Assembly (NCBI GenBank): GCA_964106645.2
Contig: OZ067050.1
Reading direction: 5' to 3' (one strand)
From: Podarcis pityusensis
Taxonomy: Eukaryota
DNA length: 64,000 bases
Shown here: one piece after another, positions 1-45,405 of the stretch
Layout of the letters: every line of letters begins with the position of its first letter
Numbering within the stretch: the first letter of the stretch is position 1
Notes under the pieces: model-generated
Seen by the model: only the letters and a program-made list of their open reading frames with translations
Database searches by the model: none
What the model was told of the DNA's origin: nothing
Program-made: the position numbers and the translations under genes

Positions 1-747
1 GCAACTGGGATCATTTGATATAAAGTGCATTACAAACAATCCTGGAACCAGATGACTTAGGGCTTTAAAAGATCCAAAAGAGCCCTTTAAAAAAATCAGG
101 CCTTGAAACTGACTGGAAGCCAATGGAGATGCTGCAGAAGTGAAATATGAAACACTCTCCCAAACACTTTCCAAACTTTTTAAATATGATACAACGGCCA
201 CAAACCCTCTTTGAGCAGACAGCTAAATCTGCAGGGGACCGAGTGGAAATTAAATCTCCCATAGTTCATTGTGTACTGCAGTATATTTTTTAATGACATT
301 GAATGGACCCTCCTTTTCTGTTCATACTTTTCAAGAAGGCTTCCAAATACAAGATTTGGGGTGGAGAGTGGGGCAGAACTAGGAGAGAGGGAGGGATCTC
401 CCAATATAGATTGCGAGACACTCTGATGGTGGAGGGGAATGAATGGGGCAGTATTATGCCTTTGGGGAAATGTGATAGCAAGTGATATTTCTATTTTGAT
501 TCCAAGGGGAAAGAACCCGTAGGAAGTAGCGGAAGTAGAAAATTACTCAATTACACCGGCCTTACACCAGCAATTCTGATTTCTTTTGCCTTTACTGAAA
601 GATCTGGCTTTTTTTTGTAGCTTATCACACTACGTCCCCGTCCCCCCAATCTTCTTGCTTTATTTGTTTTGTCATTTGTTCAATAAAGCTTTTGAACATA
701 CTTTTTTTTTTAAAGGGATGGGAGCCTGGAGAAATGTAGTAGGAACA

Positions 748-832
748 GTTCAGAGAGAGGGAGCAGGAGCGGGGGGTGGGGAGAGAGAGACAGTTCAGAG
801 AGAAGGAGAGAAAGTTCAGAGAGAGAGGGGGG

Positions 833-878
<46 letters not shown>

Positions 879-908
879 GTTCAGAGAGAAGGAGAGAGAG
901 AGTTCAGG

Positions 909-945
<37 letters not shown>

Positions 946-995
946 AGAGAGAAGGAGAGAGAGAGTTCAGGGAGGAGAGAGAGAGAGAGAGAGAG
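748..995. repeat. Compound (GA)n/(GACA)n purine-rich microsatellite with duplicated AGTTCAG-containing units
   Basis: Directly visible; explains the spurious RE/SL-rich ORFs at 586-1097. Confidence 0.95.
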
Positions 996-1019
996 TTTTC
1001 TAAAGAAATTATCACTCAC

Positions 1020-1101
1020 CCGGGAGCTGTAATACACCCGCAGGATTGGATTCCCTGACAAGTCGATGGTCTTGTGGCTCTCCCCACCTTTTACCACGGT
1101 G
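1020..1101 (-). CDS. CDIPT: CDIPT coding exon 4
   Basis: CACCAG acceptor, CGG|GTGAGT donor; TVVKGGESHKTIDLSGNPILRVYYSSR; 82 nt. Confidence 0.95.
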
Positions 1102-1811
1102 CTGGTGGGAGCAGAGAAGGTAGTTAAAATGGGAGCCAGGAGTGCTCAGCCTCTCTTCCCTTCCACGCCTCTCTATCCCAGCAGGGGGGGCACCATAGCT
1201 GAGCGGCAGAGCATCTGGGTTGTTTGCAGAAGACCCCAGGTTTGGTTTCCGGCACCTCCAGTTAAAAGGAATAGGCAGACGGGCAATACGAAAGGCTCCC
1301 TATCAGCCCGAGACCCTGCCGCAAGTCAGAGCAGGTGAGGCTGAGCCAGACCTGGACATCATTGTCCAATATTGTACAAGGCAACTTCTGGTGCCGCCAT
1401 CGAGGGCAGAGTCTGGTACCTGTGGAGATGGAGCCAATGGGAGGCGACGTCAAGGCTCATGCTGAGTTGGAACCAAAGGGCAGATTCAGGGTAGAGCATA
1501 GCGAGGTTCACCAGCAGGCACATGGTGGCGCAGCGGTCCGTCAGCATGTCCAGCATGGCGCCAAAGCGGGTGCCTGGGAAGAACAGCGCACATTAGAAAG
1601 GCAAGGGTGCTGTAAACCAATGGGGAGGAAGCTATGCATACAGTAGAGACTGCAGCCACACGTCACCCGCAACCCATCAAAGTTTTAATGCATATATTCC
1701 CTGTTTAGGGAAGTTTTTAATATTAAATGCTGTATTGTTTTTAACACTTGATTGGAAGCTGCCCAGTGTGGCTGGGGAAACTCAGCCAGATGGGCGGGGT
1801 ATAAATAATAA

Positions 1812-1849
<38 letters not shown>

Positions 1850-4031
1850 TACTATTTTGTGGCTTGCTATGTGCTTGACAAGTTTCTGCTGCCCCAGGCA
1901 GGTGACAGGCACAGGTGGCTGTGCTTCTGCTGTGAGGCCATGAGTTGTGTGGTCCAGGCAGGCACACTTGAAAACAACAGGTTTCGGTGTGCAGCTTACA
2001 CAGACGGAAAGTACCGAGAGCCTTGTGAAACCTTCCCATCTCAGCAAGAAAAGCTCACGCTTCCTTTTGGCTACAGCTGCGGATCTGGAGGGTTTTCCCC
2101 ACAGCCAGGCATTATTCCTGTAGATTTCTGGGAGGGAGGGTGAGGCAAAGAGTAGCACTGTGTTGCAAGAGGAAGTGGGGGGGGGGCACAGACCCTCCTT
2201 CTTTGTGGCTGCTGCTGGCAGGGGAGGTTCAGGCAGGCAGCGCCTTGTTGCAGCAGCAGCAAAGTACAGTTCTGAGGATGGGCAAGACTGAGGGATAGCT
2301 CCTTGCCTGCTGCCACCCAGTGAGCTCAAACCTGAACCAACCTTGTAGCTCATACTCTTAAGCAACACGGCAACCTCAGTCGTCTTCTGAGGAATGCAGC
2401 TCAGCAGTGGGAGACATGCTGCCCACACAGGAGGTCTCAGGTGCATCCTCTAGCATCTTCAACTAATAAAGGGTCAGTTAGCCACTCTCTCTCTATCTCT
2501 CTCTCTGTATATATATGTTCAAACTGACTGCATTACACCACAACAAATTATTCCATACCGCACAGAATGCATACATGCCATGCATTTAAAAGCACCCCAA
2601 AAGAATCCTGGGAACTATAGTTTGCCGCTCACAAAGCCATGTGCTTTCAGTGTATGGCTCGTATGAGCCACCCTGTAGCCCTCTCTGCCTTGAGGCAAAC
2701 AAGCCTTACCTTGGTCCAGGGCCCGAGCCGCATAGCCATCAAAGGCATCAAGGAAACCACTTAGGAGGTAAAAGAAGGATGCTATTATGTGGGAGGTTGG
2801 CATAAAATAGAACGCGATAAAAGCGAAGATTATGCGGGCGTAACCTGCAAAGGACAAGGAAGCAAAATGAGACTTTGTCCTGGAATCTTTTAACCCCCAA
2901 GCCCTGCAGCCCTCAGAAAACTGGGGAAATGGGTCATGCAAATTCTAGTTGGTTCCACTCCTTTGCACAACCCCACATCCCCAGATACCTAGGCAAGAGT
3001 CACTCAAAGATCAGTAATGTTTGCTTCAGGAGTGTTGAAGAGAAGGAGAAACAGACTCCCTATTTTAGAAACACCCTTTTCCTCTTTTGTTTTTGGCACT
3101 GAAAGCTACAATCAACTGTAAGAAATGAAAGGGTCCAGACTGAGCCTACAAGAGTCAGGTGAGTCACTGCCTGCCTGTCACATCTGATCTGGAGGAGACA
3201 GTCTAGATGCTGCTGCTGCTGCCTTCAGCTGCAGATTAACACTTGTGAAAATAACAGGGCAGGAAATAGAGGGGAGTGTTGAAGCAGAAGGCCCGGAGGC
3301 AAGGCAAAGGAGGCGGGGAAGGGGCCGGAGCACGAGGCGCTTCTCAGCTTTTACCAAGCGAGATCAGACCAAAGGTCGATCTAGTCCGGCATCGGCACCC
3401 GGTTTTCCAGGCTGCATTCGGGAAGTCTGTAAACGAAGCATGAAGGCAAGGAGCCTTCACCCACCTGTGTCTGTCTCCCAGCACCGGGATTTGGAGCTCT
3501 TACTGCTTCTGAACATCTCGAGAGGCCCAGAACTAGGTCAGGTCTCCTGGGCCAGGCCTGTCCTCCCTGGAAGAGCATCGCAGCACCCCACCCTAAGCAC
3601 GTTTACACAGAAGCGACTCCCCCGGTGCAGTTCAGCTGGGTTGATGAGGCTCTTCCCGGGGCTCATGGATTACACCATTAGCCACAGCAGGGCTGCCTCA
3701 TCGAGATTAATGGGCGTGACTAACGAGGCCCCCATTCATTCCAGCCGGTCTACTCATTCAGGATGCGAACACACACACACCATCCTTTTAAAGCATCCTT
3801 AAAGCACATATGAATCCTGGGAACGGTGGTTTGCAAGGGCTAAAAAGTCCGTGCCGGGTAAACTACACTTCCCAGCATTTCGGGGAGGAGAAGCATAGCG
3901 CTTTTAAGTGGATGGGGCGCGCGCAGCCCGACGTGTTTCAGGATCGCAGCCTCCTCCTCTCCCCCGCCCGGCACCCCGGGGAACGTACCGATGAGGTTGG
4001 GGACGAAGAGGAAGATGTTTTCTTGCTTCAT
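1020..4031 (-). CDS. CDIPT: CDP-diacylglycerol--inositol 3-phosphatidyltransferase (PI synthase), 5' part; exons 3989-4031, 2710-2844, 1420-1573, 1020-1101; continues beyond window start
   Basis: Spliced translation MKQENIFLFVPNLIGYARIIFAFIAFYFMP...LDAFDGYAARALDQGTRFGAMLDMLTDRC...HWLHLHSTVVKGGESHKTIDLSGNPILRVYYSSR matches the CDP-alcohol phosphatidyltransferase motif and recalled human CDIPT; all introns GT-AG with matching phases. Confidence 0.97.
1185..1390 (+). mobile_element. tRNA-derived squamate SINE (Squam3-like), diverged
   Basis: CATAGCTGAGCGGCAGAGCATCT...CCCAGGTT...CTCCAGTTAAAAGG...AAGGCAACTTC; related copies near 15828, 25620 and 36178. Confidence 0.65.
1420..1573 (-). CDS. CDIPT: CDIPT coding exon 3
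   Basis: TTCCCAG acceptor, AG|GTACCA donor; GTRFGAMLDMLTDRC...; 154 nt. Confidence 0.96.
1697..1850 (+). mobile_element. L2-type LINE 3' end with (ATT)n tail
   Basis: CCCTGTTTAGGGAAGTTTTTAAT...GCTGCCCAGTGTGGCTGGGGAAACTCAGCCAGATGGGCGGGGTATAAATAATAAATTATTATT; the same 3' end follows RT-like sequence at 33510-33815. Confidence 0.75.
2710..2844 (-). CDS. CDIPT: CDIPT coding exon 2
   Basis: TTGCAG acceptor, G|GTAAGG donor; GYARII...RALDQ; 135 nt. Confidence 0.96.
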
Positions 4032-4625
4032 CTCGCGGCCAGCTGTTGCTCCGGCGGCGGAACCTCCTTGCAAACCCCGCTCCAGCCCCGATGCAACGCT
4101 CGGACCACGCAGCGCCCACCCGCTGCAGGAGCCCCTCGTATTCCGCTCTTTCTCTTCCTCACGATGGACTCGGAGACTCCCGCTCCCCGCTTTCTGCCTT
4201 CCTGCTTTGGCCCAATGCACGCAGCTTCCCCCGGTTTCCGCAACCTTCAGCTACTCTGTTCAGGTTCCGAAAGGAAAATGTCTGCCTGTCTCTTTAAAAA
4301 CTGCGCTCCCGCCCCTTCCCCGGGGAAGAGGGACATTTCGGAACGCCAATGGTTTCGTCCCCGTACGCTCCCCTGCCGGCTTTCGTTTTGGTGTAGCCCC
4401 ACCAACAAGAAGCCGGGCTAGAAGGGCCACTTCTCCTCGTCTTCTTCCTGTGATTTATGGTTACTCCGCTCCTAGAGCGTTCGGAGGACCGAGGCTTCAG
4501 AAAAGCTCCATTTAGTAGAGAGAGTCGGGCGAACAGCCGCCGACATGGAGGTTGGCTTTGGAGCGCTTCCGGCTTCCCCTGGGGCGGCTCCTTCGCACCC
4601 TCCTGTTTTCTTATTGGCCAGTCAG
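3850..4625 (-). promoter_or_regulatory. CDIPT CpG-island promoter / 5' UTR
   Basis: CpG-rich; CCAAT box (4613-4617), GC box (4581-4587) and ETS motif CCGGAAG (4566-4572) upstream of the ATG. Confidence 0.75.
3989..4031 (-). CDS. CDIPT: CDIPT coding exon 1 (MKQENIFLFVPNLI)
   Basis: ATG at 4031; donor G|GTACGT; 43 nt. Confidence 0.95.
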
Positions 4626-5169: not shown

Positions 5170-5396
5170 CAGTGGTACTTCGGTTTTCGAACGTAATCCG
5201 TTCCGGAAGACCATTCGAGTTCTGAAACGTTCGAAAACAAAAAAATCAGTAGTCGACAGCTAGGCCTCAGGATCTTGCCGTGTGGCATGTTCAACTTCCG
5301 AGGCGTATTCGAAAACCGAAGCATTTATTTGCAGGTTTACGGTGTTCAAAAACTGAAATGCTAGTGAACAGAGATGTTCGAAAACAGGTACCACTG
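5170..5396. mobile_element. Tc1/mariner (Tigger-like) MITE
   Basis: Terminal inverted repeats CAGTGGTAC.../...GTACCACTG, TA at left flank. Confidence 0.8.
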
Positions 5397-5974
5397 TGTG
5401 TGTGTATAAATCAAAATCACAAGCATGGGTCCAGCTGGGATTTGAACTCAAGACTCCTTGGCCAAGTCCAGCACTCAGTCCATTACACCACACCACCTCT
5501 TGCTTGCTAATCTGTGAACAGATATGCAGGCTGTACAGTATATGAATTCACTCATGTATATGCACTGGTCAGGGTTTTCACTTGTTTGTTCATTTGCATT
5601 TTATTTAAATATATTTTGGAAGAGGTGGCAGTGCCAGCTGCTTTGAGTAGTTCTTCAATCCCTTCATGGACAGAACCTGATGTTTACCCAGAATGCATCT
5701 TATGGCAATTAACCCAACATGCTTTGCAGCTTTCCCCCCCTTCCCAATTCTGCTTGCTGTGATTATTGCAAGGATAGCCAACCTGGTGCCCTTCAGATTA
5801 TAACTCCCAACAGCCCCAGCCAGCATGGCCAATGGCCAGGGATGGTGGGAACCATAGCTGACCAACATCGGGAGCGTGCCATTTTGGCTCTCTCCGATGG
5901 AATGGGCGAGAGATGCATTGTCCTTTTCCCCTCCAGATCCTGGAGGGAAATGGGAGAGGGGTTCAAGCGGAGTG

Positions 5975-5980
5975 TTTATT
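5975..5980 (-). terminator. Poly(A) signal AATAAA of the uncharacterised gene
   Basis: TTTATT on plus strand, 40 nt past the TGA at 6021-6023. Confidence 0.65.
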
Positions 5981-6020
5981 ATTCTCTCTTGTGAATACAG
6001 TGGGTCTGGAGCCAGGTTGA

Positions 6021-6158
6021 TCAGGTGTCCTCAGGCAAAGCCTCTGGCTGGTCGGTGTCGCTGTCCGAATTCTCTGGCTGAGGCGGATCCTTGCGCCGAG
6101 ACACTTTGCTCAGGAACTTGCCTGGCCCACCCTGGCGGGACGGGCAGCAGATCAGGGG
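6021..6158 (-). CDS. Uncharacterised gene terminal exon (PLICCPSRQGG...EALPEDT*)
   Basis: Long pyrimidine tract plus CTACAG acceptor; TGA then AATAAA. Confidence 0.72.
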   Translation of the reverse strand, partial: PLICCPSRQGGPGKFLSKVSRRKDPPQPENSDSDTDQPEALPEDT

Positions 6159-9100
6159 CTGTAGTGCAGGGAAGGAAGAAAATGAGAAGTAAAACACAGT
6201 TTCCAAGCACCTCCACCACCCTGACACTGAAAAAGTCTGTTTCCTACTTGGCATAGAATGTGGCTATGATTATACCAAGGAACGTGATGATTTATGGTCA
6301 AAAGTTCCCCAGCTCTGGACTTGGTCCTGCTGGAAGTGTGGGGTTAGGATTGCCACCCTCCCAGACGGAAACAGACTTTGCTCTTTTACATGTTTCATAT
6401 ATTCACTGAAACACATCCAAAATTAAAGTTATCCCTGGCAACACAATTTCCCCCAAAGTTGGCAGTCCACCCCCAGCCATGCTAGTATAAAACCCGTGAC
6501 TGGAGTGTGGTGATGCTAAACGTTTCAGAATTTCTGAAAATAAGAAAAATGGAGTGTTTTATAGTCCCACGCATGAGGGAAATCCTCTTCTTTCTCCCTC
6601 CTCCCTCAGCCTGGATGTGGGCAGGAGTCACAGCTGATACCTGGGTGCATTCTGCACAGGTTGGGTTGAGGACAGGAAAAAGAGAAGGAGGCTCCATAGA
6701 AGAAGAGATTGTGGCCTGCCGGAATGCAAAGACCCACATCTGCTGAAACTCTTGCTTTTGCATAACTATGAAGTATGGCAACCAGTGTGTTGGACTAGGG
6801 AGAGCTGGATTCACATCCACAACAAAGCATGATGCTTGCAGGATGACCTGGAGGCCAGGAACAGTTGCTGTCGGCATAGCCTATTTCGCAGGGTTGTTCT
6901 GGGAATAAAATGGGAAAACCCTAGATTTGCATCTACAAATGCAACATTCCGCAGCTTGCAGAAAAGATCCACTGGTGTCACTATGTGTTGCCTCGCAAAC
7001 TGTCAAGCAATTATTCACAGCTTTAAGGACTCCAGTTATAAGTCTGTTTGCTTTGTGGTATAATCAATGTAACCCTAGGGGCACCCTACTTCTTGTCTGG
7101 AGTTGTGAGTCACAAGTTGTGGATGGGGCCTGGCAGGCTGTCCTCCCTCCCTCCCTTCCACATGGTCTCCTGTCCAGTCTCTCTTTGTCTGCTTAGAAAA
7201 GCAGAGATCAGCTGATGACAATGTTCCCATCAGTGCATTCCTATGCCAGGAAAAGCAGTACCAGTAGATTTGTAAGTCCTTGTAGTATAACAGACTTTAA
7301 ATTGTTGGACTAGGACCTGGGAGACCAAGGTTCAAATCCCGACTCAGCCAATGAAGCTCACTGGGTGATCTTGGGCCAGTCACTGCCTCTCAGTCTAGCC
7401 TACCTCACAGGGTTGCTGTGAGGGGGGGAAATGGGAGGGAAGAACCAAGTACACCACCTTGAGCTGCTTGGGGGGGGGGGAAGATTGTACATAAATGTAA
7501 TAAATATACATCAAACAAACAAATCCTGCTCCTCTTGCCTCTACCACCTGTCCTCTCCAATTTTCCCTGGTGCCTTATGCCCAGAGAGTCAATACCTGAA
7601 TGGTGCTGAGGTCCTGCTCAGATACTAGGGGAGAAAGCCCCTCCACACCAGCCGAGGGGGACCGTCGGGGCCGGCGCTGGGTCACATACCCCATCTGATC
7701 TTCCAGAAGCACAGTCTCCACCTGGTAAGGGAAGAAAGCATATTCAGAGCCATTTTTCAGTCTTGGGAGTCAAAGCCCACACTTCCAACACACATACTAC
7801 TACTAGCATTAACAAATACGAGAGATGACCTGTGTTAGGGTTTGCAGCAAAAACAACAGATGGCCTTGTGGCACTTTGAAGACAGACGGATTCATTACCA
7901 CATCAGTTTTCACAGACTAGCACAAGAGGAGCTGTCCTCAGCTGGCAGATTAGGCGCACACAAGTACAGAGGGGAAGACAACCCCCGCCCCGTATTTAGG
8001 GGTGGGACCCAAAAGCTATTAAATGGAAGAGGTAGGGCCTGTCACATTGTCACAGTATATTTCTATCTGCCTACTGAGGATACATTTCCTGCATTTGGTA
8101 TAGTGGCTGCTAGTTCACAAAAGCTTATGCCACAAAATTCAGGCTTTAAAGTACCACACAAGACCCCTCTGGTTCTTTAGCGGGAGCCACAGAAGGGCAG
8201 TGCCACTGAGCACATGCAGAATCTCTCGCTCACAAGTTAGTGACCACAGGCAGCTTCTCAAATGCCATATTCCTTAGGAAAAATAGGTTCCCAGGCCAGA
8301 ACTCCAGCACCTTCTAATTTAGAAATGAAAGGGGGGCAGACGAGCCATGCTTGGTCCATATCGGCCCCTGCTGGCAGCCACCTCTGTAGCCAGGAAACTT
8401 GCAAACTCCTCAATGGGCTGCAGCATGGCATAAATCTGCAGTGTGGGTGGCTTGTCAATAGAAGCTGAGACCTGTCAAATGGAGGTCTTTTGAGTATCAA
8501 AGTGGGGAGGTTTGAGCAGGGGCAAGAATAATGTGTCCCAGAGGAGAAAGGAGACAGGGTAGTTACAAATCTAAAGGGATGGTTAAATGTGTCAGGAATA
8601 TGAATGACAGAATGGAGACAAGCAATTCACAAAGTGTCATGACTGATAAATTAGAAACCATGCAAATTACACATGCCCCACTTTCACTGGGCAGCCCCTC
8701 CTTCTACGACGTTTTGTGTCTTTCTTGCCAAGGTGGCTGGACACAAGTTTCAAAAGTAGCTCCCACTTTGTTTGGGGCCCTTCTTCTTCTCTCTGTTGTT
8801 GGAGGGGGAGATCCTGTTGCAACTGATCCATAAGGATCAGGCTCAGCATCCAGCCTTGCTTTCTTGTATGTGATTAATGTCTCCATTTATTTCTCTAACC
8901 AATAGCGGACCTCAAGGGATCCAAAGTCGCTTGGTGGGGAGCCGGGCTGCAAAAGCCAACCCCGATTTGTATAATGATACGAAACAGCGGTTTGAGGGCA
9001 CGTACTTGCTTATGGCGTGAGGGGTTTCGCCCTCGAATCTGCAGAGACAGACCCTCCTCTTCCTCTGTGCAGTCCACATCCTGCTGTGGGAGAAAAGGGA

Positions 9101-10560
9101 AGGATGGAAGGGGGGGACCCAGAAGCAACCCCTCTCCCCCCCCTCTTATTGGGCCCCTCCTCACTATTTCATAGGATCTCCATAGTGCTTCCTGCTATTT
9201 CCATTAAAAAAAATAATATTTGGTTTTACAAGTGTAAAGATACAACAGTACCAAGTACGTATTCATATTTAGAGATTTCTTGGAATCTCCAGACTTCCCA
9301 CCATCCCCTCCCTGGGTCCTACTGTCAACATTTTCAACTTTGTATTATTTCACAATGCATATTTTATACCTCTTCATGTTGTCCATAGTGTTTGTTACAT
9401 TACAAGTGTTATTAAAACCCTGCTAATGTTTTCATCTGCTTACAGTGATCTCCTAAATATATTAATTTTTTTGCTTCCTGTTACTTCCTGATTCCCCTTA
9501 GCCCCTCCTACTTCAGATTAAGCCCCTCCCACCTCACTCAGCTGTCAGGCCTGAGGCCAGCTGTGCCTGGCTCAGAGTCCACAGCTGACGTTGCCCTTTA
9601 TTATTAACAGTGATAATTAAATCTATATACCACCCTCCATCCAAAGATCACAGGGCAGTTTACAGCATAAAATACAAAAGGAAACACAAAATACATATCA
9701 CAACAAAAGGGGGGAAAGCCAGTCACCCTATCCCGCGAACGCATTAAAAAGGCCATAGATTGTTTGCTCAGCCAAATGCCTGTTTATACAGAGTTATTAC
9801 ATAACACAGGTGAGAGACGCATACGCTCTGCTGCCACCTGGCCCCTGGCACTTTTCTGGTCTCTGGATCTGGTGGTCTCTGGATCTGGAAATCTCTGTTT
9901 AAATTTGAGAGTACCAACAACTGCTCTGTGGGGAGGGTTTTTAGGAAGGCCGACAGGGAAAAAAGAGAACCCAGAGCTTGCTCCTGTGGCACCTGGACTG
10001 CCCTCTCCCCTCACAGAGACATCAACCATCCTCTTTTTTTATCGCTAATTTCTGTCAAGAACACAGTTGAGGAGCAAATGGTTAAATTGCACCTCCCCAT
10101 CTGCTGTGGTCATAATATATAACCACCTCCGAGCACTACATTTAAAAAATATTCTGACGTGGCTGCCAGCATGGGCATAGCTAGGGTTTTTGTTAGGGAG
10201 GGGCAGACCTCCTGTTAGGTGGGGGGCAGAACCTCAGTTTGCTGTGTATTTTTATTGATTATGGGGGGGCAGCTGCCCCTCCCTGCCGCCCCTCGGCTAT
10301 GCCGGTGGCTGCAAGCCTAGACCCTTGGCTTCAAAGCTGTAATGCATCTCAGCATGTGCTGAATGCCTTCCTCTCGTCAGAGGGCAGATTACAACCAGCC
10401 CCTGCTCATCAAAACTTTTAGGTTGAAGACCACGGGGGACGCATATCACTCACTCTTTCACAGGCACAAGAGGATATGAAGCACCGGAAGTCATGACCCC
10501 CTCCTTGAAGCCCATCATCACTAAGATCTGGTCTGGAAAAAGGAGCATGGAAATAAAAGC

Positions 10561-10591
<31 letters not shown>

Positions 10592-13500
10592 GTGGAATTG
10601 TAGAGTTGGAAAAGACCCTGAGGATCATCATCTAGTCCAACCCGCTGCAATGCGGGAATATTCAGCCATCCCATACAGGGAATGAACCTGCAACCTTGGC
10701 GTTATCAGCACCACACTCTCCCCAACGTTAAAATGATGGGTTTGCCCCACAAGGGCCTCCCACAAGGTCACTCACGGACAGGTGAATTCAGAGCCTGGGC
10801 TGGGTTCTCGTCTGGCTGGGAATCCTGGCTTGCACTTCAGAACAGGGTGCAGGAGTACTGCAAGGCAGGAGGAAGCAGTGGGGTGGCTTTCTTTAATGAT
10901 TTATATATCCTGCACCTTCAACACAAATTTACATGTGCAGAGCTGCTGGCAAGGCAGTAAGAAGCAAAAGTAAGAAAATAAATAAAGATAGCAATTTATT
11001 ATTATTATTATTGCCCACAAGTTATTAAAGCAAACTAAAACAGCAGCAGTCCATTGAAGGAGAGAGTAAAAACTGAACTGCACTACATTAAAAATGGTAA
11101 CATTAGCAGCTCTTTAAAAAGAAACCTGGGAAAACAGAAATAAGACTTCTGCTAGGCCCTAAATGGTAGGGCCCACCATATTCGCTTGACCGTAATTAAT
11201 TTTAACATTTTAATATTGTACTTCTAAAGCTCTTGTAACCTGCCTTGGAATAGCATGGTGAAGTGCAGAAATACGGTGAGCAATAATAATTCTAGCAGCA
11301 AGAGCTCCAGGCAGGCCTCCTCGGGGGAGTACAGTGGTACCTTGGCTTACGAACTTAATCCGTTCCGGAAATCCGTTCTTAAACTGAGGCGCACTTTCCC
11401 TAATGAGGCCTCCCGCCGCCAGTGCCCTTCCACCATTCGGATTCCATTCTCAGACTGAGGTAAAGTTCTCAAACCGGGACACTACTTCTGGTTTTCAAGA
11501 GTTCGTAAACCGAATCGTTCAAAAACAGGACTGTTCTTAAACCGAGGTACCACTGTATATGCCACAGTTGAGGGGCCACCCACAAAAAGGCTCTGTTGCT
11601 CCATTCACCGTGCCACACATCATCTGAACCCTGCCTACTCTCTCTCAGTAGCCCCACCCATTCTTATGGAGGCCACACCCACTGAATTCTTAGCTTCACG
11701 CAGAACCTGAAGTAGGTGAAGATATGGGGGTCAGTGGGTGTGACCCCCATAAGAATGGGCGGGGTTACTGAGGGAGTAGGCAGGATCCAGATGGACAGCG
11801 ACAGAGACGACGGGTGTCCAGGCAGAAAACAAATTCCTAGCACCAGGGATATTGATACTGACCATTTTCTGTACGTCGGATGATGGTGCAGAATTCAGAA
11901 TAGGGTAGCGGGGGCTCTGTCAGGAGCTGGAAGAGCCCTTGGTAGTCAGGGGGGTTCAGGAACCCCAAAAGTCGCTCGGCCAACCCCCGGGCTGCCATGT
12001 AGCTCAGCCGGGCCTGGGCCAGGGACTGCTCTGCATGGAAACAAGCGAGCTGGAGAGAAGGCAGAAGGGGACAAGTCACGGCTACGCAGGCTTTGAGCCC
12101 CACACAAGGCCCCAGATACAAGAGATTCCTACATAAAACTGCTATAAAAAGAGCTCATTTTTGTCACTCTTAACCGTGCCATGGGTCTTTTATAAATGAC
12201 AACAATTTTATTCATTTATTTTTAAATCTTACATACTGATTTATTTACAAATCTTCAATATCTTTTCATTTATAAGCTTACAAATCTCAAAGAAGTCCAC
12301 AATACGCAAAAACCATTAAAATAACCACTGAAACGTCAACATACTCGTATAATTGCAGCAACTCCAACAGCCTGAACAACAACAAAAACAGTCAGGAAAT
12401 GCCCAAGAGAAAGGAAACGTCTTAAAATTTACGGCCTGTACTACATTGAAGGAAAATATAATGAAAATGGTACACAGATGGTATATAACCCCAGTAAAAC
12501 TGGCTAAAATGTATAAAACATGTAATAAGTGTTGGAAATGTAAAGAAAAAGAAGGAACATTCTATCATATGTGGTGGGAGTGTAAAAAGGTGAAAGGCTT
12601 CTGGGAAATGATATATAATGAATTGAAAAAGATGTTGAAATATACGTTTGTTAAGAAACCGGAGGCCTTCCTACTAGGATTGGTAGGTAATGAAATAAAA
12701 TAAGAAAGACTGTAAACTTTTCCAATACGCAGTAACAGCAGTGAGAATACTTCTGGCCCAAAGATGGAAACAGGAAGAAATTCCAACGGTGGAAGAATGG
12801 AGAACGAAATTGACTGAATACGCAGAATTGGATAAACTAACAGGGAAGATTTGATACCAGCGAGACCAAAAGTTCATCGAGGACTGGGGGAGATTTACAG
12901 ACTATCTGAAAAACATATGTGATGAACAGATAACGCTTGTTGGTTTTCAAGAGACTCTGTGAAAAATTAAGAAATATTGTAAAAAAGAGTAAGAAGGGAG
13001 AGGTGATTTTTAAAGGCAATATTAAGCTTAGAAATGCGTTAAATAATATAAATTTAAAACGAAAGATTGGCAGAGAAACTGAGGGAAGTCAAAAAATAGA
13101 TGAATGTGTGATAAAATGTGAATGGATTGTATAAAATTGTTGTTGAAAATGAATAAAAATGTTATAAAAAAAGAAAGAAAAAGGAAACGTCTTTAACAGT
13201 CTGTGAAAGCACCCTATTGTTGGGTGCTTGCCTGATCTCCTTCCACAAAATGGGTGACACAGTGTAAAAGCCCCCCTCCTTTGACACTGGCAGCAAAAGT
13301 GCTAAAGGCTGGTTGTTACACACCTGTCACAGTGGCTGTGTACACACACCTTACATTTAAAGCGCATTACTTTCCCCAATGAACCCTGAAGTTTGTTAAG
13401 TGATCAGGGCATTGGATGGAGCCAGTGTTAGAATATGTGTGTGGGGGATCAGGGTTCAAATCACCCCTCAGCCCAAGGTTGGGTGTCCTGGGCTAGAAAC

Positions 13501-13951
13501 TATCCTTCAGCCAGGCTTCCTCAACCGTGGCCCTCCAGATGTTTTTGGCCTACAACTACCATGATCCCTAGCTAGCAGGACCAGTGGCCAGGGATGATGG
13601 GAATTGTAGTCTCAAAACATCTGGAGGGACAAGTCTGAGGAAGCCTGCTTCAGCCTAACTCCCAGTGTACTCTCTGTGTGCAAAGGCTGAGAAATGATAT
13701 TGGGAGTTTTGAGCAAGAGAATTATTTCTCTCATTCAGTCTCTCTAATACTGGTCATTCCTAGAGCCTGGGCTCAGGTACCTGGGCAGACTTTTGCGCTT
13801 CCACAGAAGCCTGGACCATTTTGGCAGTGCCGGCCACAGTGTTCACCAAATACTCAGCCATGGCTTCCGATATTCTGGGTGCAAAGCCAGTTGGGGCAGC
13901 TTTATCGTCCTGAGGAGGGCTGTTCCTGGGGGTGCGACAGCTCTCTTCCAT
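6021..13951 (-). CDS. Uncharacterised protein-coding gene, about 387 aa; exons 13781-13951, 11863-12049, 10776-10857, 10454-10532, 9825-9920, 9006-9083, 7596-7721, 6641-6847, 6021-6158
   Basis: Exons with canonical AG/GT sites join in phase (0,1,2,0,0,0,0,0) into one stop-free ORF starting at aaaATGG; downstream AATAAA; no homolog recognised from memory. Confidence 0.72.
6641..6847 (-). CDS. Uncharacterised gene exon (VILQASCFVVDVNP...PTCAECTQ)
   Basis: CCTGGCCTCCAG acceptor, CAG|GTATCA donor; 207 nt, open in phase 0. Confidence 0.58.
7300..7510 (+). mobile_element. tRNA-derived SINE (Squam2/MIR-like)
   Basis: TTGGACTAGGACCTGGGAGACCAAGGTTCAAATCCC...CTGGGTGATCTTGGGCCAGTCAC...CCTACCTCACAGGGTTG; copies near 14255 and 42292. 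Confidence 0.75.
7596..7721 (-). CDS. Uncharacterised gene exon (VETVLLEDQMGYVTQRRPRRSPS...EQDLSTIQ)
   Basis: TTCCCTTACCAG acceptor, CAG|GTATTG donor; 126 nt, phase 0-0, CpG retained. Confidence 0.75.
9006..9083 (-). CDS. Uncharacterised gene exon (QDVDCTEEEEGLSLQIRGRNPSRHKQ)
   Basis: NAGNAG acceptor TTCTCCCACAGCAG, donor CAA|GTACGT. Confidence 0.68.
9825..9920 (-). CDS. Uncharacterised gene, possible exon (LLVLSNLNRDFQIQRPPDPETRKVPGARWQQS)
   Basis: Acceptor region CCCCACAGAGCAG (needs the second or third AG to keep frame), donor AGC|GTATGC; can be skipped without frameshift. Confidence 0.45.
10454..10532 (-). CDS. Uncharacterised gene exon (PDLSDDGLQGGGHDFRCFISSCACER)
   Basis: CTTTTTCCAG acceptor, AGA|GTGAGT donor; phase 2 to 0. 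Confidence 0.72.
10594..10722 (-). mobile_element. tRNA-derived SINE with CR1-like tail (lacertid POM-SINE-like), next to an (AT)n tract
   Basis: Minus strand GTGGTGCTGATAACGCCAAGGTTGCAGGTTC...GGTTGGACTAGATGATGATCCTCAGGGTC...CCAACTCTACAATTC. Confidence 0.65.
10776..10857 (-). CDS. Uncharacterised gene exon (VLLHPVLKCKPGFPARREPSPGSEFTC)
   Basis: CCTTGCAG acceptor, CC|GTGAGT donor; phase 1 to 2. Confidence 0.72.
11332..11555. mobile_element. Tc1/mariner (Tigger-like) MITE
   Basis: TIRs CAGTGGTACCT/AGGTACCACTG with TA on both sides. Confidence 0.85.
11621..11793. repeat. Inverted repeat with about 65-bp arms (hairpin / probable MITE)
   Basis: 11621-11685 is close to the reverse complement of 11731-11793. 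Confidence 0.85.
11863..12049 (-). CDS. Uncharacterised gene exon (LACFHAEQSLAQARLSYMAARGLAERLLGFL...RRTEN)
   Basis: CTTCTCTCCAG acceptor, G|GTCAGT donor; only the phase-0 frame is open. Confidence 0.78.
12424..13179 (+). mobile_element. 5'-truncated L1-clade LINE (ORF2 C-terminus with CCHC knuckle, 3' UTR, A-rich tail)
   Basis: CWKCKEKEGTFYHMWWEC motif; AATAAA at 13152; 14-bp target site duplication AAAGGAAACGTCTT at 12410-12423 and 13180-13193. Confidence 0.92.
13512..13647. mobile_element. hAT-like MITE nested in a SINE remnant
   Basis: TIRs CAGGCTTCCTCA/TGAGGAAGCCTG, flanking CTTCAGC(C) duplication, internal palindromic ACTACCATGATCCC core. Confidence 0.8.
13781..13951 (-). CDS. Uncharacterised gene, start exon (MEESCRTPRN...VEAQKSAQ)
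   Basis: Strong pyrimidine tract ending TTCTTAG at 13959; Kozak aaaATGG; donor CAG|GTACCT. Confidence 0.75.
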
Positions 13952-14254
13952 TTTGGATCTAAGAAAGAGAGAGAAAGATGGACACTGGGCAGAGAAAGGA
14001 ATGTGTAATTGGCGATAAAAAGAAGTAGGAGCAAACAGCGGCTGAAAGAATCCATTTCAGAAGCAGTTATTGGGCCATGAGGCTTGACTTTTCTATCCAG
14101 AGCACGAACCGGAGCTACTGTTGTTTCTCTCTACCGGGCCTGAAGATGATGATTCTGAGCTAGAGTATCTTTTATCCTTCACAGAATTGCTGGAACACAT
14201 GATTTTGAACTTGAGACATGTATCCACAACATGCATTGTTGATACTATGGGAAG

Positions 14255-14480
14255 ATCAGCACAGTGTTAGTGGTTAGAGGGTTGGATTAGGACCTGGGTT
14301 CAAATCTTCCCTCAGCCATGAAGGTCACTGGGTAACTTTGGGCCAACCGCTGCCTCTCAGCCTAACTTGTCTTACAAGGTGGTTGTGGGGATTAAATGGG
14401 GTCAGGGGAAACCATGTATACTACCTTGAGTTCCTTGGAGAAGAAAGTAAGATATAAATGCAATGAACTAAATAAAAAAA
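14255..14480 (+). mobile_element. tRNA-derived SINE (Squam2/MIR-like)
   Basis: Same family as 7300-7510, with A-rich tail. Confidence 0.75.
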
Positions 14481-15408
14481 AAGATGAGCCCATTGCTTGC
14501 CATTTATTCTCACATGAATCTCTCCAGTGACTGAGATCATTTAAGGAGGCCCAAGGCTGAGGACTTTCATCTTACCAGCAATGGGGGCTTTCTGACTAGA
14601 GACATTTCAATGATGTAAATCCCCGCTTTTCTGCTTGCTGAAAAATTTAATTTTTAAACACCAGGTAAAGATTAGCTTGTTTCTGCAGGCACTTCATGGC
14701 TTTTGAAATGGCTTTGAGAAATTCACCCCTGCAAGTGCACTCCATTGTCTTTTGAGATGGATGGATGCCAGCCACAACCGTGAGAGATCCAGCCACTCTA
14801 AACTGTTCCCATCTACGGCTGGTTGAGGACACAATTTGTCGTTTACCTATCATGTATTTTAGATTGACATTTTAGAACATACACTGTCTTAGATTCTTTT
14901 TTAATTATCAAAGGATGGGATAAAAAAAAAACTTTAAATATATTGGGGAGAAAGATCATAAGTCTTCATTTCTGGTGTCCCCATAAAAAAGTAAGTTAGC
15001 ATAGGTTCATATTTGCAATAAGTGCGGCTTCTGGACCTGTCTCTGAAGTAATTTGTTGTTGCTTTTGTTCCTTAATATTATTTTCTTAATTTGTATCCCA
15101 TCACGGAACACAAGGTGGCATAAGGGTGGTCACCTATGACCAGGCCCAAACCTTCTCAGCTTCACGACTCAAAAAATACCCATCACTGAAATTTTGCAGG
15201 CAATGCAGAGCTCTTTGGGAAAACACAAGATTTGCTCTTCCTTTAACCAGCAGGTGCAGACTATTGTATTGGGAGAAAGCAGTTACAGAAAGAAGTTACA
15301 GACTTCTGCCTTCCCTGAGGGCAATTTTTGTTCTTAAAGCAGGCAGTACCCACAAGTTTCTCTCTTTTTTATGACTAGTGCTGTGAATTAAGATGTAAGT
15401 CCACATAC

Positions 15409-15498
15409 CTCTTTACTCCCACCCCCCTTGCTTGCAAATGTGATATGAGCAGAGTACTGCCAATTTTCTGCTTGCTTTGTGTGCGCATGTGTCCACGA
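15409..15498 (-). other. Upstream exon of the uncharacterised gene (5' UTR or 29-aa N-terminal extension MRTQSKQK...)
   Basis: TTTATAG acceptor, GAG|GTATGT donor; ATG at 15488 is in frame with the downstream ORF but has weak Kozak context. Confidence 0.5.
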
Positions 15499-15827
15499 CT
15501 ATAAATGCAGAAACAGGGTAAGAAGGACTGACTGATGGGAGGAGGCACTCTCAGGGGAAATCGCAAACTTGATGTAGGCCCTGGTGCACTTCTGGAAACC
15601 ATGTAGCCTGCAACTAATCCTGAGCCAGGACTGTATGGTAAGCGGGAGAAAGGGCAGGGCACCAGTGAGTGCACTGCTTTAACTGGGAAAGGTAGACAAC
15701 GCTCCCTTCCATTCCACATACCTACACAGATAAAGTAATTCTAACGTGCTGGATTTTGTCAGCTGATTCCACTGTGCCCAACATTAAATGGGAGTCTGAT
15801 GTACGAGGAAGGGTGTTTGCTAGGTGG

Positions 15828-15995
15828 CTTAGGAAGCTGCTCTTGTGAGTCAGGTCTATTTAGTTCAGTAGTTTACACTGACTGGCAGCATGGCTTTCAG
15901 GGTTTCAGGCAGGGCGTAACTTCTGCAAGTCCTACCTGGATTTGCGAGGGATTGAACCCACAACCTCGTATGCTCAGCCAGGTAGCTACAGCCCA
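15828..15995 (-). mobile_element. Squam3-like SINE, diverged
   Basis: TAGGAAGCTGC...TACACTGACTGGCAGC...GGATTGAACCC, resembles copy at 36178. Confidence 0.6.
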
Positions 15996-16074
15996 ATGAC
16001 ACAAATTCGCATATGCTACTACAAAGTACTGCCTCTGAACAAATTAAAGAGAGGGCAAGTGCCTGGGGTCTTAC

Positions 16075-16106
16075 CAACGCTATACTTTACAGCATTCCCA
16101 GCTGCC
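16075..16106 (-). other. Candidate 32-nt 5' UTR exon of the uncharacterised gene
   Basis: TTTGTTTACAG acceptor, TTG|GTAAGA donor; contains minimal uORF ATG-CTG-TAA. Confidence 0.4.
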
Positions 16107-16456
16107 CTGTAAACAAAGGTTTTTTTTAATAAAAAAGGAAAAGGGGGAAAATTTTTTGGAGGCACCCTCTAGCAATGCCTCTAAAGCCCACACTTAATGG
16201 ATAGGACTCTCTCACTGAATATGAAGGTGGTGGCCTGGAAACTGAGCAAGTGGAAACACAATGTGGCTTAGTGGCAAATGCCCTTCCTATTCAGGGGACT
16301 TCACCTTCACATCTCCCATTTTCTATGCAGAAAAGGCCCTTGAGGTCTGTTAAGATACAAACCATCAGCCCCTTCCTTCCCTTTCAAGCCCCGTCCTGTG
16401 GGGGTAGGATGCAACCAAGATGCTCCTTCAATTGGTAGCCAACTGCCAGGGATGCA

Positions 16457-16497
16457 GTTGCCATGGGAATGCTTCCAGAGCCCAGTTGCTAGGCGAT
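16457..16497. promoter_or_regulatory. Tandem RFX X-box-like motifs, candidate promoter of the uncharacterised gene
   Basis: GTTGCCATGGGAAT (16457-16470) and GTTGCTAGGCGAT (16485-16497) resemble the X-box consensus GTTGCCATGGCAAC / GTTGCTAGGCAAC. Confidence 0.55.
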
Positions 16498-16789
16498 GGA
16501 ATTCCTTGTAATGTAAGAGGGTTGAATGTTTCAGAGGCAGAACAGGGCAGACCTGCAGAGACTGAGATGGAGCACATATACAACTGCAGGTTTGTGAGTA
16601 GAGGAAAGAGGGTCTTCCAGAAGGAAATGCATCCTTCTGTTATTATCAGATAAGTGAATACATACACACACACATATATTTAGATACGGCTAGTGGTCAC
16701 TTGAATTCAACTCGCTTCTGAGCCCAAGAATATTTTTTTTTTCAAGACTGAGAAGGAAGGAATATAGATTTAGGGAACTCAAGCACCGT

Positions 16790-21375: not shown

Positions 21376-45405
<24,030 letters not shown>

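What the first reader, a model, noticed from the sequence alone, without database searches (positions are those of the whole stretch)
5975..16500. Unrecognised nine-exon protein-coding gene hidden between TAOK2 and CDIPT
Seen in sequence: nine minus-strand segments flanked by canonical acceptors and donors splice in compatible phases (0,1,2,0,0,0,0,0) into a stop-free ORF of about 387 aa, from aaaATGG (13951) to TGA (6021), with AATAAA 40 nt later. The 1-to-2-to-0 phase chain across three consecutive exons is hard to obtain by chance. The product has an Ala-rich, probably helical N-terminal region (SEAMAEYLVNTVAGTAKMVQASVEAQKSAQLACFHAEQSLAQARLSYMAARGLAERLLGFL), a Pro/Ser/Arg-rich middle, a hydrophobic block (SCFVVDV...HWLPYFIVM...MWVFAF), a Cys cluster made across a junction (CAECTQ|PLICC) and an acidic tail. 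It does not match any 16p11.2 neighbour I can recall (HIRIP3, KCTD13, SEZ6L2, ASPHD1, MVP, C16orf92). Inference: a lineage-restricted or mammal-lost gene. Exons 9825-9920 and 6641-6847 are less certain and can be skipped in frame.
Basis: partly seen in the sequence, partly recalled or inferred. Interest (0 to 1): 0.88.

Follow-up and report, generated by a model that had tools for sequence, protein, structure and literature searches.

The report
Conserved uncharacterised gene between TAOK2, CDIPT
The stretch holds a real, expressed 286-residue protein gene with seven coding exons (not nine) that public annotation of sister lizards already lists as an "uncharacterized LOC"; it belongs to an unnamed family found from sharks to reptiles but not found in mammals or birds.

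Summary
The nine minus-strand segments exist as described and do chain into a 387-codon ORF. Only seven are exons. Spliced RNA-like contigs of a close relative join E2-E3-E4-E6-E7-E9 and skip 9920-9825 and 6847-6641.

The seven-exon product (286 aa) differs by two residues from Podarcis lilfordi CAI5790927. It is the orthologue of P. muralis LOC114582816, P. raffonei LOC128400908 and Lacerta agilis LOC117058054, all named "uncharacterized protein". So the gene is not unrecognised, only uncharacterised.

Relatives were found in squamates, turtles, alligator, axolotl, coelacanth and sharks. None was found in mammals, birds, frogs or teleosts. The order TAOK2 -> gene -> CDIPT holds in lizards, turtles and alligator.

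No Pfam, PDB or fold match was found. The model has a confident helical region at residues ~25-122 and a disordered tail with a conserved RRSPRRSPS...SPLVSE block. dN/dS is 0.24 against Zootoca. A promoter block with X-box-like and MYB-like motifs is conserved from lizard to turtle and hints at RFX control.

The hydrophobic block and the Cys cluster are artefacts of a false exon that is partly SINE-derived.

The parts
16431..16500 (-). Conserved promoter block. It holds X-box-like ATCGCCTAGCAAC (16497-16485), X-box-like ATTCCCATGGCAAC (16470-16457, 12/14 to the palindromic RFX consensus) and GGCAGTTGGCTACC (16447-16434, which contains the MYB-type CAACTG on the other strand).
   Evidence: The block is conserved among lacertids, Anolis, gecko and a sea turtle. 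It lies ~65-135 bp upstream of the start annotated in P. lilfordi. Binding was not tested.
16305..16365 (-). Probable non-coding first exon (5' UTR).
   Evidence: The P. lilfordi gene model start (L005:4001) maps to window 16365. The donor GT at 16304-16303 and the splice to 13958 are my inference from the sequence. No read evidence.
13781..13958 (-). Coding exon 1: acceptor AG before 13958, ATG at 13951, 57 codons. It encodes the start of the long helix.
   Evidence: The peptide is identical in three Podarcis models. The E1|E2 junction is continuous in the mRNA contig L010 and in the intronless shark ORF. Not covered by the reads laid.
11863..12049 (-). Coding exon 2 (187 nt).
   Evidence: The RNA contigs cover 11863-12046 and join it to exon 3. 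HMMER hits to reptile orthologues reach E 1e-24.
10776..10857 (-). Coding exon 3 (82 nt).
   Evidence: Joints 10856/7<->11863 and 10532<->10776.
10454..10532 (-). Coding exon 4 (79 nt).
   Evidence: Joints 10532<->10776 and 9083<->10454.
9825..9920 (-).
   Evidence: Skipped in the RNA contigs. The donor is AT in P. lilfordi. Zootoca has a 30-nt insertion and an in-frame stop here. It is absent from all orthologous proteins.
9006..9083 (-). It has a tandem CAGCAG acceptor, which explains the 285-aa X2 isoforms.
   Evidence: Joints 9083<->10454 and 7722<->9007. The isoforms differ by one Q.
7596..7721 (-). It encodes the most conserved block, HKQVE...RRSPRRSPS...SPLVSE.
6641..6847 (-). It is an open stretch that is partly SINE-derived.
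   Evidence: Skipped by the joint 6158<->7596. Homologous to a SINE over 6901-6792. Diverges at the intron rate. Absent from all orthologues.
6021..6158 (-). Last coding exon (45 codons + TGA at 6023-6021).
5240..6020 (-). Probable 3' UTR. It includes AATAAA at 5980-5975, which the RNA contigs appear to read through.
   Evidence: Contigs X1 and X2 extend 783 and 819 nt beyond 6057. If colinear, they end inside a high-copy repeat at ~5400-5170. Colinearity was not verified.

Best explanation
Window 16365 to about 5240, minus strand, is one real gene. It has a short non-coding first exon and seven coding exons (13951-13781, 12049-11863, 10857-10776, 10532-10454, 9083-9006, 7721-7596, 6158-6021) that encode 286 residues. 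It is the orthologue of Podarcis muralis LOC114582816. It belongs to an unnamed gnathostome protein family that sits between TAOK2 and CDIPT in squamates, turtles and crocodilians. All of this is shown. The product has one confidently predicted helical region (residues ~25-122: a 57-residue helix plus two short helices). The rest is a disordered tail. The tail carries an acidic patch, an invariant basic Ser/Pro block (HKQVE..E..MGG.YV..RRRSPRRSPS....LSPLVSE), a PSRQGG.GKFLSKV.RR motif and an acidic SDSDTD end. Inferred, at roughly 25-30% odds: it is a small phospho-regulated adaptor. Under this reading the helical region binds a partner, or itself, in coiled-coil fashion, and the tail motifs are docking or phosphorylation sites (RRxS and SP sites, with CK2-type acidic serines). 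Transcription would be driven by RFX-type, and possibly MYB-type, factors through a promoter block conserved from lizards to turtles. That would place the gene in a cilia or spermatid-type programme.
For: Exon structure: spliced contigs with CT..AC (= GT..AG on the minus strand) joints at the exact boundaries, at depth 141/105 against 3-7 in introns. The product differs by two residues from the 286-aa model P0014, and the cluster holds RefSeq LOCs of four lacertids. An mRNA contig of another squamate has an uninterrupted 290-aa ORF that is colinear across all junctions. Constraint: against organism A the exons differ by ~1.0% (4 of 413) and the intronic contigs by ~4.4%. Against Zootoca the exons differ by 4.4% and the introns by 6.3%, and dN/dS is 0.24; against P. 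lilfordi dN/dS is 0.09. Family: 30+ proteins from squamates to sharks, E down to 1e-133 and 1e-14 to 1e-27 for fishes, all without Pfam domains. Synteny: TAOK2 -> gene -> CDIPT on one strand in Alligator, Mauremys and Lepidochelys; CDIPT directly downstream in Anolis, Heteronotia, P. lilfordi and Zootoca. Structure: pLDDT 91-97 over residues 30-80 and 100-120, below 50 for most of 131-286. Promoter: the only site with 12 or more of 14 matches in the scanned 1.8 kb lies 105 bp upstream of the transferred start. The block is invariant at many columns in five species including a turtle. X-box and MYB consensus and the role of RFX2 and A-MYB in testis: PMC2797782, PMC4498915, PMC4745085.
Against: Exon 1, the 5' exon and the 3' end have no read evidence in this species. 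The runs are only guessed to be RNA, and their tissue is unknown. Function: nothing was found in Pfam, PDB sequences, Foldseek, ESM Atlas or VIA (best Z 6.0, generic long helices). The homodimer test gave no answer. No X-box was found upstream of the shark genes. The X-box-like sites are half-good matches (12/14) and no binding data exist. The absence from mammals and birds rests on protein databases searched with word-limited or single-exon queries, not on genome searches.
Confidence: 0.9

Rival explanations
1. The reader's nine-exon, 387-residue protein, with a hydrophobic block and a Cys cluster, is a genuine isoform made in some tissue.
For: Both extra segments keep the frame and have AG/GT in this genome. 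E8 also stays open in P. lilfordi and Zootoca. Contigs drop rare variants.
Against: The dominant contigs of two runs skip both segments. The E5 donor is AT in P. lilfordi, and E5 has a stop in Zootoca. E8 diverges at the intron rate with 8 non-synonymous against 5 synonymous changes, is partly SINE-derived, and has a 7-nt deletion at its donor in a relative. No orthologue from gecko to shark has an insert at either junction.
Confidence: 0.04
2. The family is not missing from mammals and birds. It is a fast-evolving orthologue of a named gene that sequence searches failed to link (hidden orthology), or it lies in unassembled GC-rich bird DNA.
For: The middle of the protein is poorly conserved, and the alligator protein is only 37% identical to the gecko protein. 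The search for homologous proteins is limited by shared words and by length, and the exhaustive HMMER search used only the 62-aa exon 2.
Against: The C-terminal block is nearly invariant from shark to lizard, so it should have been picked up in mammals if present. Three family searches returned only 'uncharacterized' proteins of the same taxa. No Pfam family matches.
Confidence: 0.12
3. The transcript is real but the ORF is not translated: it is a non-coding RNA or a decaying gene in this lizard.
For: There is no protein-level evidence. Possible upstream ATGs lie in the inferred 5' exon.
Against: The ORF is intact in every species examined. dN/dS is 0.09-0.24. 4 of the 5 exonic differences listed fall at third codon positions. 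Protein conservation reaches sharks.
Confidence: 0.02

Closest known systems
Uncharacterized protein LOC114582816 (Podarcis muralis) and its orthologues: LOC128400908 (P. raffonei), CAI5790927 (P. lilfordi), LOC117058054 (Lacerta agilis), LOC118095513 (Zootoca), LOC134292387 (Anolis), LOC132584505 (Heteronotia), LOC112060912 (Chrysemys), LOC109283116 (Alligator), LOC102352916 (Latimeria), LOC103187233 (Callorhinchus)
   Same: Same length (286 aa), same seven coding exons, 99% identity to the Podarcis models, the same neighbours TAOK2 and CDIPT, and the same conserved N-terminal helix and C-terminal motif block.
   Different: The exon-7 and exon-9 peptides differ by one or two residues from every Podarcis model held (S238, Q268), so the window comes from another species or allele. 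The shark members are single-exon genes at another locus, between V-ATPase subunit e-like and RPL26-like genes.
RFX2 / A-MYB target genes of spermatocytes and spermatids (e.g. Alf, Spag6; PMC2797782, PMC4498915)
   Same: X-box-type sites and MYB-type sites (YAAC[G/T]G) are clustered within ~150 bp upstream of the start, and they are conserved across reptiles.
   Different: Only motif matches exist (12/14 and half sites). No expression or binding data are available. The coding sequence resembles no known ciliary or sperm protein.
Generic coiled-coil or long-helix segments (FlgN, TMEM120A N-terminal helices, Geminin, NEMO and others)
   Same: The predicted helix at residues 28-87 superposes on many long helices (Z 4.8-6.0).
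   Different: These scores are below the level that means anything for helical models. Identity is 2-15%. No family stands out.
Pfam FIGL1_N (PF24347)
   Same: A weak local match of exon-2 residues 4-32.
   Different: 13.3 bits against a cut-off of 27, E 0.075. It does not recur in full-length family members.

Membership tests
Vertebrate 'uncharacterized LOC114582816-like' family (unnamed, no Pfam) | Full-length sequence similarity to family members | tested here: met
   The peptides of exons E1-E4 and E6 are identical to the Podarcis models, and E7 and E9 differ by 1-2 residues. Exon 2 alone hits reptile members at E 1e-24 to 3e-9.
Vertebrate 'uncharacterized LOC114582816-like' family (unnamed, no Pfam) | Position between TAOK2 and CDIPT on the same strand (amniote members) | tested here: met
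   In the window: CDIPT exons at 1362-4070 (-), a kinase exon at 43527-43874 (-) and the TAOK2-like N-terminus at 45088-45531 (-). The same order holds in L002, L004 and L009. CDIPT is downstream in L005-L008.
Vertebrate 'uncharacterized LOC114582816-like' family (unnamed, no Pfam) | Conserved C-terminal block HKQVE...RRSPRRSPS...SPLVSE...PSRQGG.GKF and acidic SDSDTD end | tested here: met
   The block is present in exons 7721-7596 and 6158-6021. The invariant columns are Q199 E201 E206 R219 S220 S222 S229 P230 L231.
Vertebrate 'uncharacterized LOC114582816-like' family (unnamed, no Pfam) | Transcribed and spliced as the seven-exon form | tested here: met
   Five exon-exon joints appear in two runs of a close relative. 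A full CDS lies on an mRNA contig of another squamate. The E1-E2 joint was not tested in Podarcis reads.
Pfam FIGL1_N (PF24347) | Score at or above the gathering cut-off (27 bits) | tested here: not met
   13.3 bits, E 0.075. No hit among 14 full-length members.
Pfam P53_tetramer (PF07710) | Score at or above the gathering cut-off (20.7 bits) | tested here: not met
   14 bits, on an acidic 15-residue stretch.
RFX-regulated (X-box promoter) genes | X-box (GTNRCC N0-3 RGYAAC-type) close to the transcription start, conserved in orthologues | tested here: inconclusive
   A 12/14 match lies at 16470-16457, with a second X-box-like site at 16497-16485. The block is conserved in lacertids, Anolis, gecko and turtle (13/14 in Lepidochelys). 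The strict regular expression is not matched in the lizard. None was found in sharks.
RFX-regulated (X-box promoter) genes | RFX occupancy and RFX-dependent, cilia- or testis-biased expression | not testable with these tools
   No ChIP data or tissue-labelled RNA data were available. The run identities are coded.
Named 16p11.2 genes (TMEM219, HIRIP3, KCTD13, SEZ6L2, ASPHD1, PAGR1, PRRT2, MVP) | Pfam or sequence match to the gene family | tested here: not met
   No Pfam family matches any exon or any family member. TMEM219 itself lies elsewhere in the window, at 60740-61006, PF14940 E 7e-10.

The most novel reading that the evidence does not exclude
This is an ancient gnathostome gene, more than 400 million years old, that encodes a helical domain with no known relatives plus a phospho-motif tail. 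It is driven by an RFX/MYB-type promoter in germ or ciliated cells. It was part of the ancestral TAOK2-CDIPT neighbourhood of the 16p11.2 block and was lost in mammals, and perhaps in birds, frogs and teleosts. The mammalian loss may have come with the rearrangement that separated TAOK2 from CDIPT, because one rearrangement end falls in the interval the gene occupies in reptiles.
Probability: 0.3. Interest if true: 0.55.

Novelty: new member of a known kind. Interest (0 to 1): 0.35.

Why it matters
For annotation, the gene should be modelled as seven coding exons and 286 aa, and the two extra in-frame segments should not be added. For biology, the family is conserved from sharks to lizards under purifying selection, yet it has no name, no Pfam entry, no structure and no paper that I could find. 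It sits inside the reptile counterpart of the human 16p11.2 copy-number region but has no detected human member. It is therefore a clean case for studying the loss of an old vertebrate gene. With its conserved X-box promoter it is also a cheap candidate for a reptile or shark cilia or spermatogenesis factor.

Tried and rejected
- Pfam on each exon peptide and on 14 family members gave only sub-threshold noise: FIGL1_N, P53_tetramer, Trp_dioxygenase and others.
- A profile search of PDB sequences gave best E 0.94.
- Foldseek against PDB had no match at E <= 0.001. The ESM Atlas shape search gave TM <= 0.29. The ESM Atlas feature search gave no usable hit. VIA wide gave only generic long helices, Z <= 6.0.
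- Homodimer prediction for residues 20-125: no answer, score 0.01. This is not evidence either way.
- A literature search for six LOC identifiers found 0 papers. A search for TAOK2/CDIPT/Anolis/synteny found nothing on this gene.
- blastn of each exon against the rest of the window found no repeat hits at E <= 1e-3. The SINE origin of the E8 5' part appeared only in a direct alignment with shuffle controls.
- A search for X-boxes upstream of the two shark genes found none.
- DNA for the Latimeria locus is not on record, and the axolotl gene is too long to fetch. The ancestral gene order could therefore not be polarised.
- TMEM219 was considered as the identity of the gene and rejected. It lies at 60740-61006 and is unrelated.
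- Searches used exon 2 by reference and then the public orthologues (P0014 and others). dN/dS was counted exon by exon on in-frame codons, leaving out split codons. The only join made was exon 0 + exon 1 inside one script, to look for upstream ATGs.

Full report
**Observation**

I re-derived the nine minus-strand segments from the sequence. They are 13951-13781, 12049-11863, 10857-10776, 10532-10454, 9920-9825, 9083-9006, 7721-7596, 6847-6641 and 6158-6021. Every internal boundary has AG and GT. The phases run 0,1,2,0,0,0,0,0. The total is 1164 nt, that is 387 codons and TGA, and AATAAA lies at 5980-5975.

**Transcript evidence**

The look-up of sequencing runs found four small runs of 'organism A' that hold about a tenth of the words of 6000-14000. 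It also found DNA runs of relatives. I laid X1, X2 (RNA-like) and X6, X8 (DNA of relatives) on 6055-12054.

- X1 and X2 each gave one contig (1437 and 1473 nt) at depth 141 and 105. Contigs in the introns had depth 3-7.
- These contigs carry joints 11863<->10856/7, 10776<->10532, 10454<->9083, 9007<->7722 and 7596<->6158.
- The skipped parts where the cut is unambiguous begin CT and end AC on the + strand, which is GT..AG on the minus strand.
- None of these joints appears in the DNA runs.
Segments 9920-9825 and 6847-6641 are skipped. Both have lengths that are multiples of three, so the frame is kept.
- The contigs end at the 5' edge of exon 2. This fits a branch between alternative upstream junctions, because P. 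lilfordi has a second model that starts 'M' + exon 2.
- The contigs run on about 780-820 nt 3' of 6057. If colinear, they end inside a high-copy repeat at about 5400-5170. The AATAAA at 5980 is thus probably read through.
- The caps (one call, 6 kb) left exon 1 and the 3' end untested.

**The two false exons**

E5:
- Its donor GT is AT in P. lilfordi.
- In Zootoca it carries a 30-nt insertion with an in-frame stop.

E8:
- Its acceptor and first ~56 nt align to two SINE copies in the window. Identity is 68% over 112 nt and the score z is 19.6 and 14.1 against shuffles.
- It differs from Zootoca by 13 of 207 nt (6.3%). This equals the 6.3% I measured over 6.2 kb of aligned introns. Eight of the changes are non-synonymous and five synonymous.
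- Organism C has a 7-nt deletion at 6634, at or next to its donor.

No orthologue has an insert at either junction.

**Identity**

- Exon 2 alone (62 aa, by reference) was scored by HMMER against 1.84 billion representatives. It hit only reptile proteins.
- Their clusters are named 'hypothetical' or 'uncharacterized protein' in Ophiophagus, Naja, Heteronotia, Paroedura, Gekko and Chrysemys.
- A full-length search with the gecko protein found 31 relatives. Among them is P0014, Podarcis lilfordi CAI5790927, 286 aa.
- The window's peptides for exons 1-4 and 6 are identical to P0014. Exons 7 and 9 differ by one residue each.
- Its 90% cluster holds P. muralis LOC114582816, P. raffonei LOC128400908, Lacerta agilis LOC117058054 and Zootoca LOC118095513.
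- The P. lilfordi locus is colinear with window 20357-2026 at 98.1%. The window is therefore a Podarcis-like lacertid, and the gene is already modelled in its congeners.
- 286 = 387 - 32 - 69, which is exactly the seven-exon form.
- An mRNA contig of another squamate (SRR6291263, 1214 nt) carries an uninterrupted 290-aa ORF that is 72% identical and continuous across all junctions, including E1|E2.

**Family and distribution**

- Members were found in many squamates, in turtles, and in Alligator, Ambystoma, Latimeria, Chiloscyllium and Callorhinchus.
- No mammal, bird, frog, teleost or lamprey protein appeared in the gecko search, in the 14-sequence profile search, or in the profile of the four non-amniote members.
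- No member has a Pfam domain.
- These searches are limited by shared words and by length, so absence is probable, not proven.
- Synteny: a ~1220-1510-aa kinase (TAOK2) -> this gene -> CDIPT on one strand in Alligator, Mauremys and Lepidochelys. CDIPT lies directly downstream in Anolis, Heteronotia, P. lilfordi and Zootoca.
- The window shows the same order: CDIPT exons at 1362-4070, this gene, TAOK2 at about 20000-45500, then a TMEM219 exon at 60740-61006, all on the minus strand.
- The two shark genes are single uninterrupted ORFs at another locus. The axolotl gene spans 400 kb.

**Selection**

- Codons were counted exon by exon.
- The seven exons give dN/dS 0.24 against Zootoca (21 synonymous, 17 non-synonymous changes) and 0.09 against P. 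lilfordi.
- Against organism A the exon pieces differ at 4 of 413 positions and the intronic contigs at about 4.4%.
- 4 of the 5 exonic differences listed are at third codon positions (my count from the frame).

**Protein**

- AlphaFold2 on the 14-sequence alignment gives pLDDT above 90 for residues ~30-80 and 100-120. The helices are 29-85, 94-99 and 107-122. Most of 131-286 is below 50.
- The disordered tail nevertheless holds the best conserved columns of the family: S195, Q199, E201, E206, G210, R218-R219-S220-P221-S222, L228-S229-P230-L231, G252, K255, V260 and R263.
- In motif terms these are HKQVE..E..MGG.YV..RRRSPRRSPS....LSPLVSE, then PSRQGG.GKFLSKV.RR, and an acidic SDSDTD end.
- From general knowledge, RRxS and SP are basophilic-kinase and proline-directed-kinase sites, and S/T-D/E runs are CK2-type sites.
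- Hence my working model is a small phospho-regulated adaptor with a coiled-coil-like binding region. This is inference.
- Fold searches found only generic long helices. The homodimer test gave no answer.

**Promoter**

- The P. lilfordi model starts at window 16365.
- The only site in the scanned 1.8 kb that matches the palindromic RFX consensus at 12 or more of 14 positions lies 105 bp upstream, at 16470-16457.
- The same or a better site stands at a comparable distance in Zootoca, Anolis, Heteronotia and two turtles.
- An alignment shows a ~70-bp block with two X-box-like sites and a CAACTG/CAACGG (MYB-type) site. Many of its columns are invariant from lizard to sea turtle.
- RFX2 and A-MYB drive meiotic and spermiogenic genes in mouse (PMC2797782, PMC4498915, PMC4745085).
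The shark loci have no such site.

**Comparison with the human map**

This part rests on my own knowledge of the 16p11.2 order: MAZ, PRRT2, PAGR1, MVP, CDIPT, SEZ6L2, ASPHD1, KCTD13, TMEM219, TAOK2, HIRIP3.

- In human, CDIPT is preceded by SEZ6L2. In reptiles it is preceded by this gene and TAOK2.
- One end of a rearrangement therefore falls in the interval the gene occupies.
- Which order is ancestral could not be tested.

**Verdict**

The gene is real, expressed and conserved. It has seven coding exons, not nine. It is already annotated in sister species but has never been characterised, and its family is old and apparently missing from mammals. The interest is moderate. The claim of an unrecognised gene falls, but an unnamed vertebrate family with a conserved RFX-type promoter remains open for study.

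Noticed in passing
window 60740-61006 (-), 20000-45531 (-), 1362-4070 (-): The gene order in the window is CDIPT, the LOC gene, TAOK2, TMEM219, all on the minus strand. Against the human 16p11.2 order as I recall it (CDIPT, SEZ6L2, ASPHD1, KCTD13, TMEM219, TAOK2), the TAOK2-side block is inverted, and one rearrangement end falls in the interval this gene occupies.
   Followed up: partly
L001:10001-11032 and L003:10001-11023: The Callorhinchus and Chiloscyllium family members are single uninterrupted ORFs (343 and 340 aa). The Callorhinchus gene lies between a V-ATPase subunit e-like gene and an RPL26-like gene, not near TAOK2 or CDIPT. They may be retrocopies that replaced a multi-exon parent.
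   Followed up: no
window 9083-9078 (-): The acceptor of the exon at 9083 is a tandem CAGCAG (NAGNAG). It explains the 285-aa X2 isoforms of P. muralis and P. raffonei, which lack one Gln. The contigs laid use the upstream site.
   Followed up: partly
window 16305-16365 (-) joined to 13958: If the inferred 5' exon splices to 13958, the leader carries upstream ATGs: at 16365, an ORF open for at least 58 codons in another frame, and at 16319-16317, a 23-codon ORF that overlaps the main ATG. These may be regulatory uORFs. The splice itself is not verified.
   Followed up: no
window 11330-11560, 5170-5400, 7300-7445, 10455-10855, 9255-9850: These are very high-copy repeats, with summed contig depth up to about 770,000 in the DNA runs of relatives. 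One element, 'ACAGTGGTACC...GTTCGAAAAC'-like, occurs in both intron 2 and the 3' UTR region. A (TA)n tract lies near 10560-10590.
   Followed up: no
window 10857 and 7606: Two coding differences stand out among Podarcis. Residue 120 is Val here and in P. lilfordi but Ala in P. muralis and in run X1. Residue 238 is Ser here, as in Lacerta and Zootoca, but Asn in all three Podarcis models and in all four runs laid.
   Followed up: partly
P0038 (Platysternon megacephalum TFJ96423.1): A 147-aa fragment of this family is named 'transcription initiation factor TFIID subunit 6' in GenBank. The name looks like an annotation error, since no TAF6 domain was seen in the family.
   Followed up: no
window 580-1145: A long GA/CT-rich low-complexity tract (translating as RE/SL repeats) lies inside the CDIPT gene region, presumably in an intron.
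   Followed up: no
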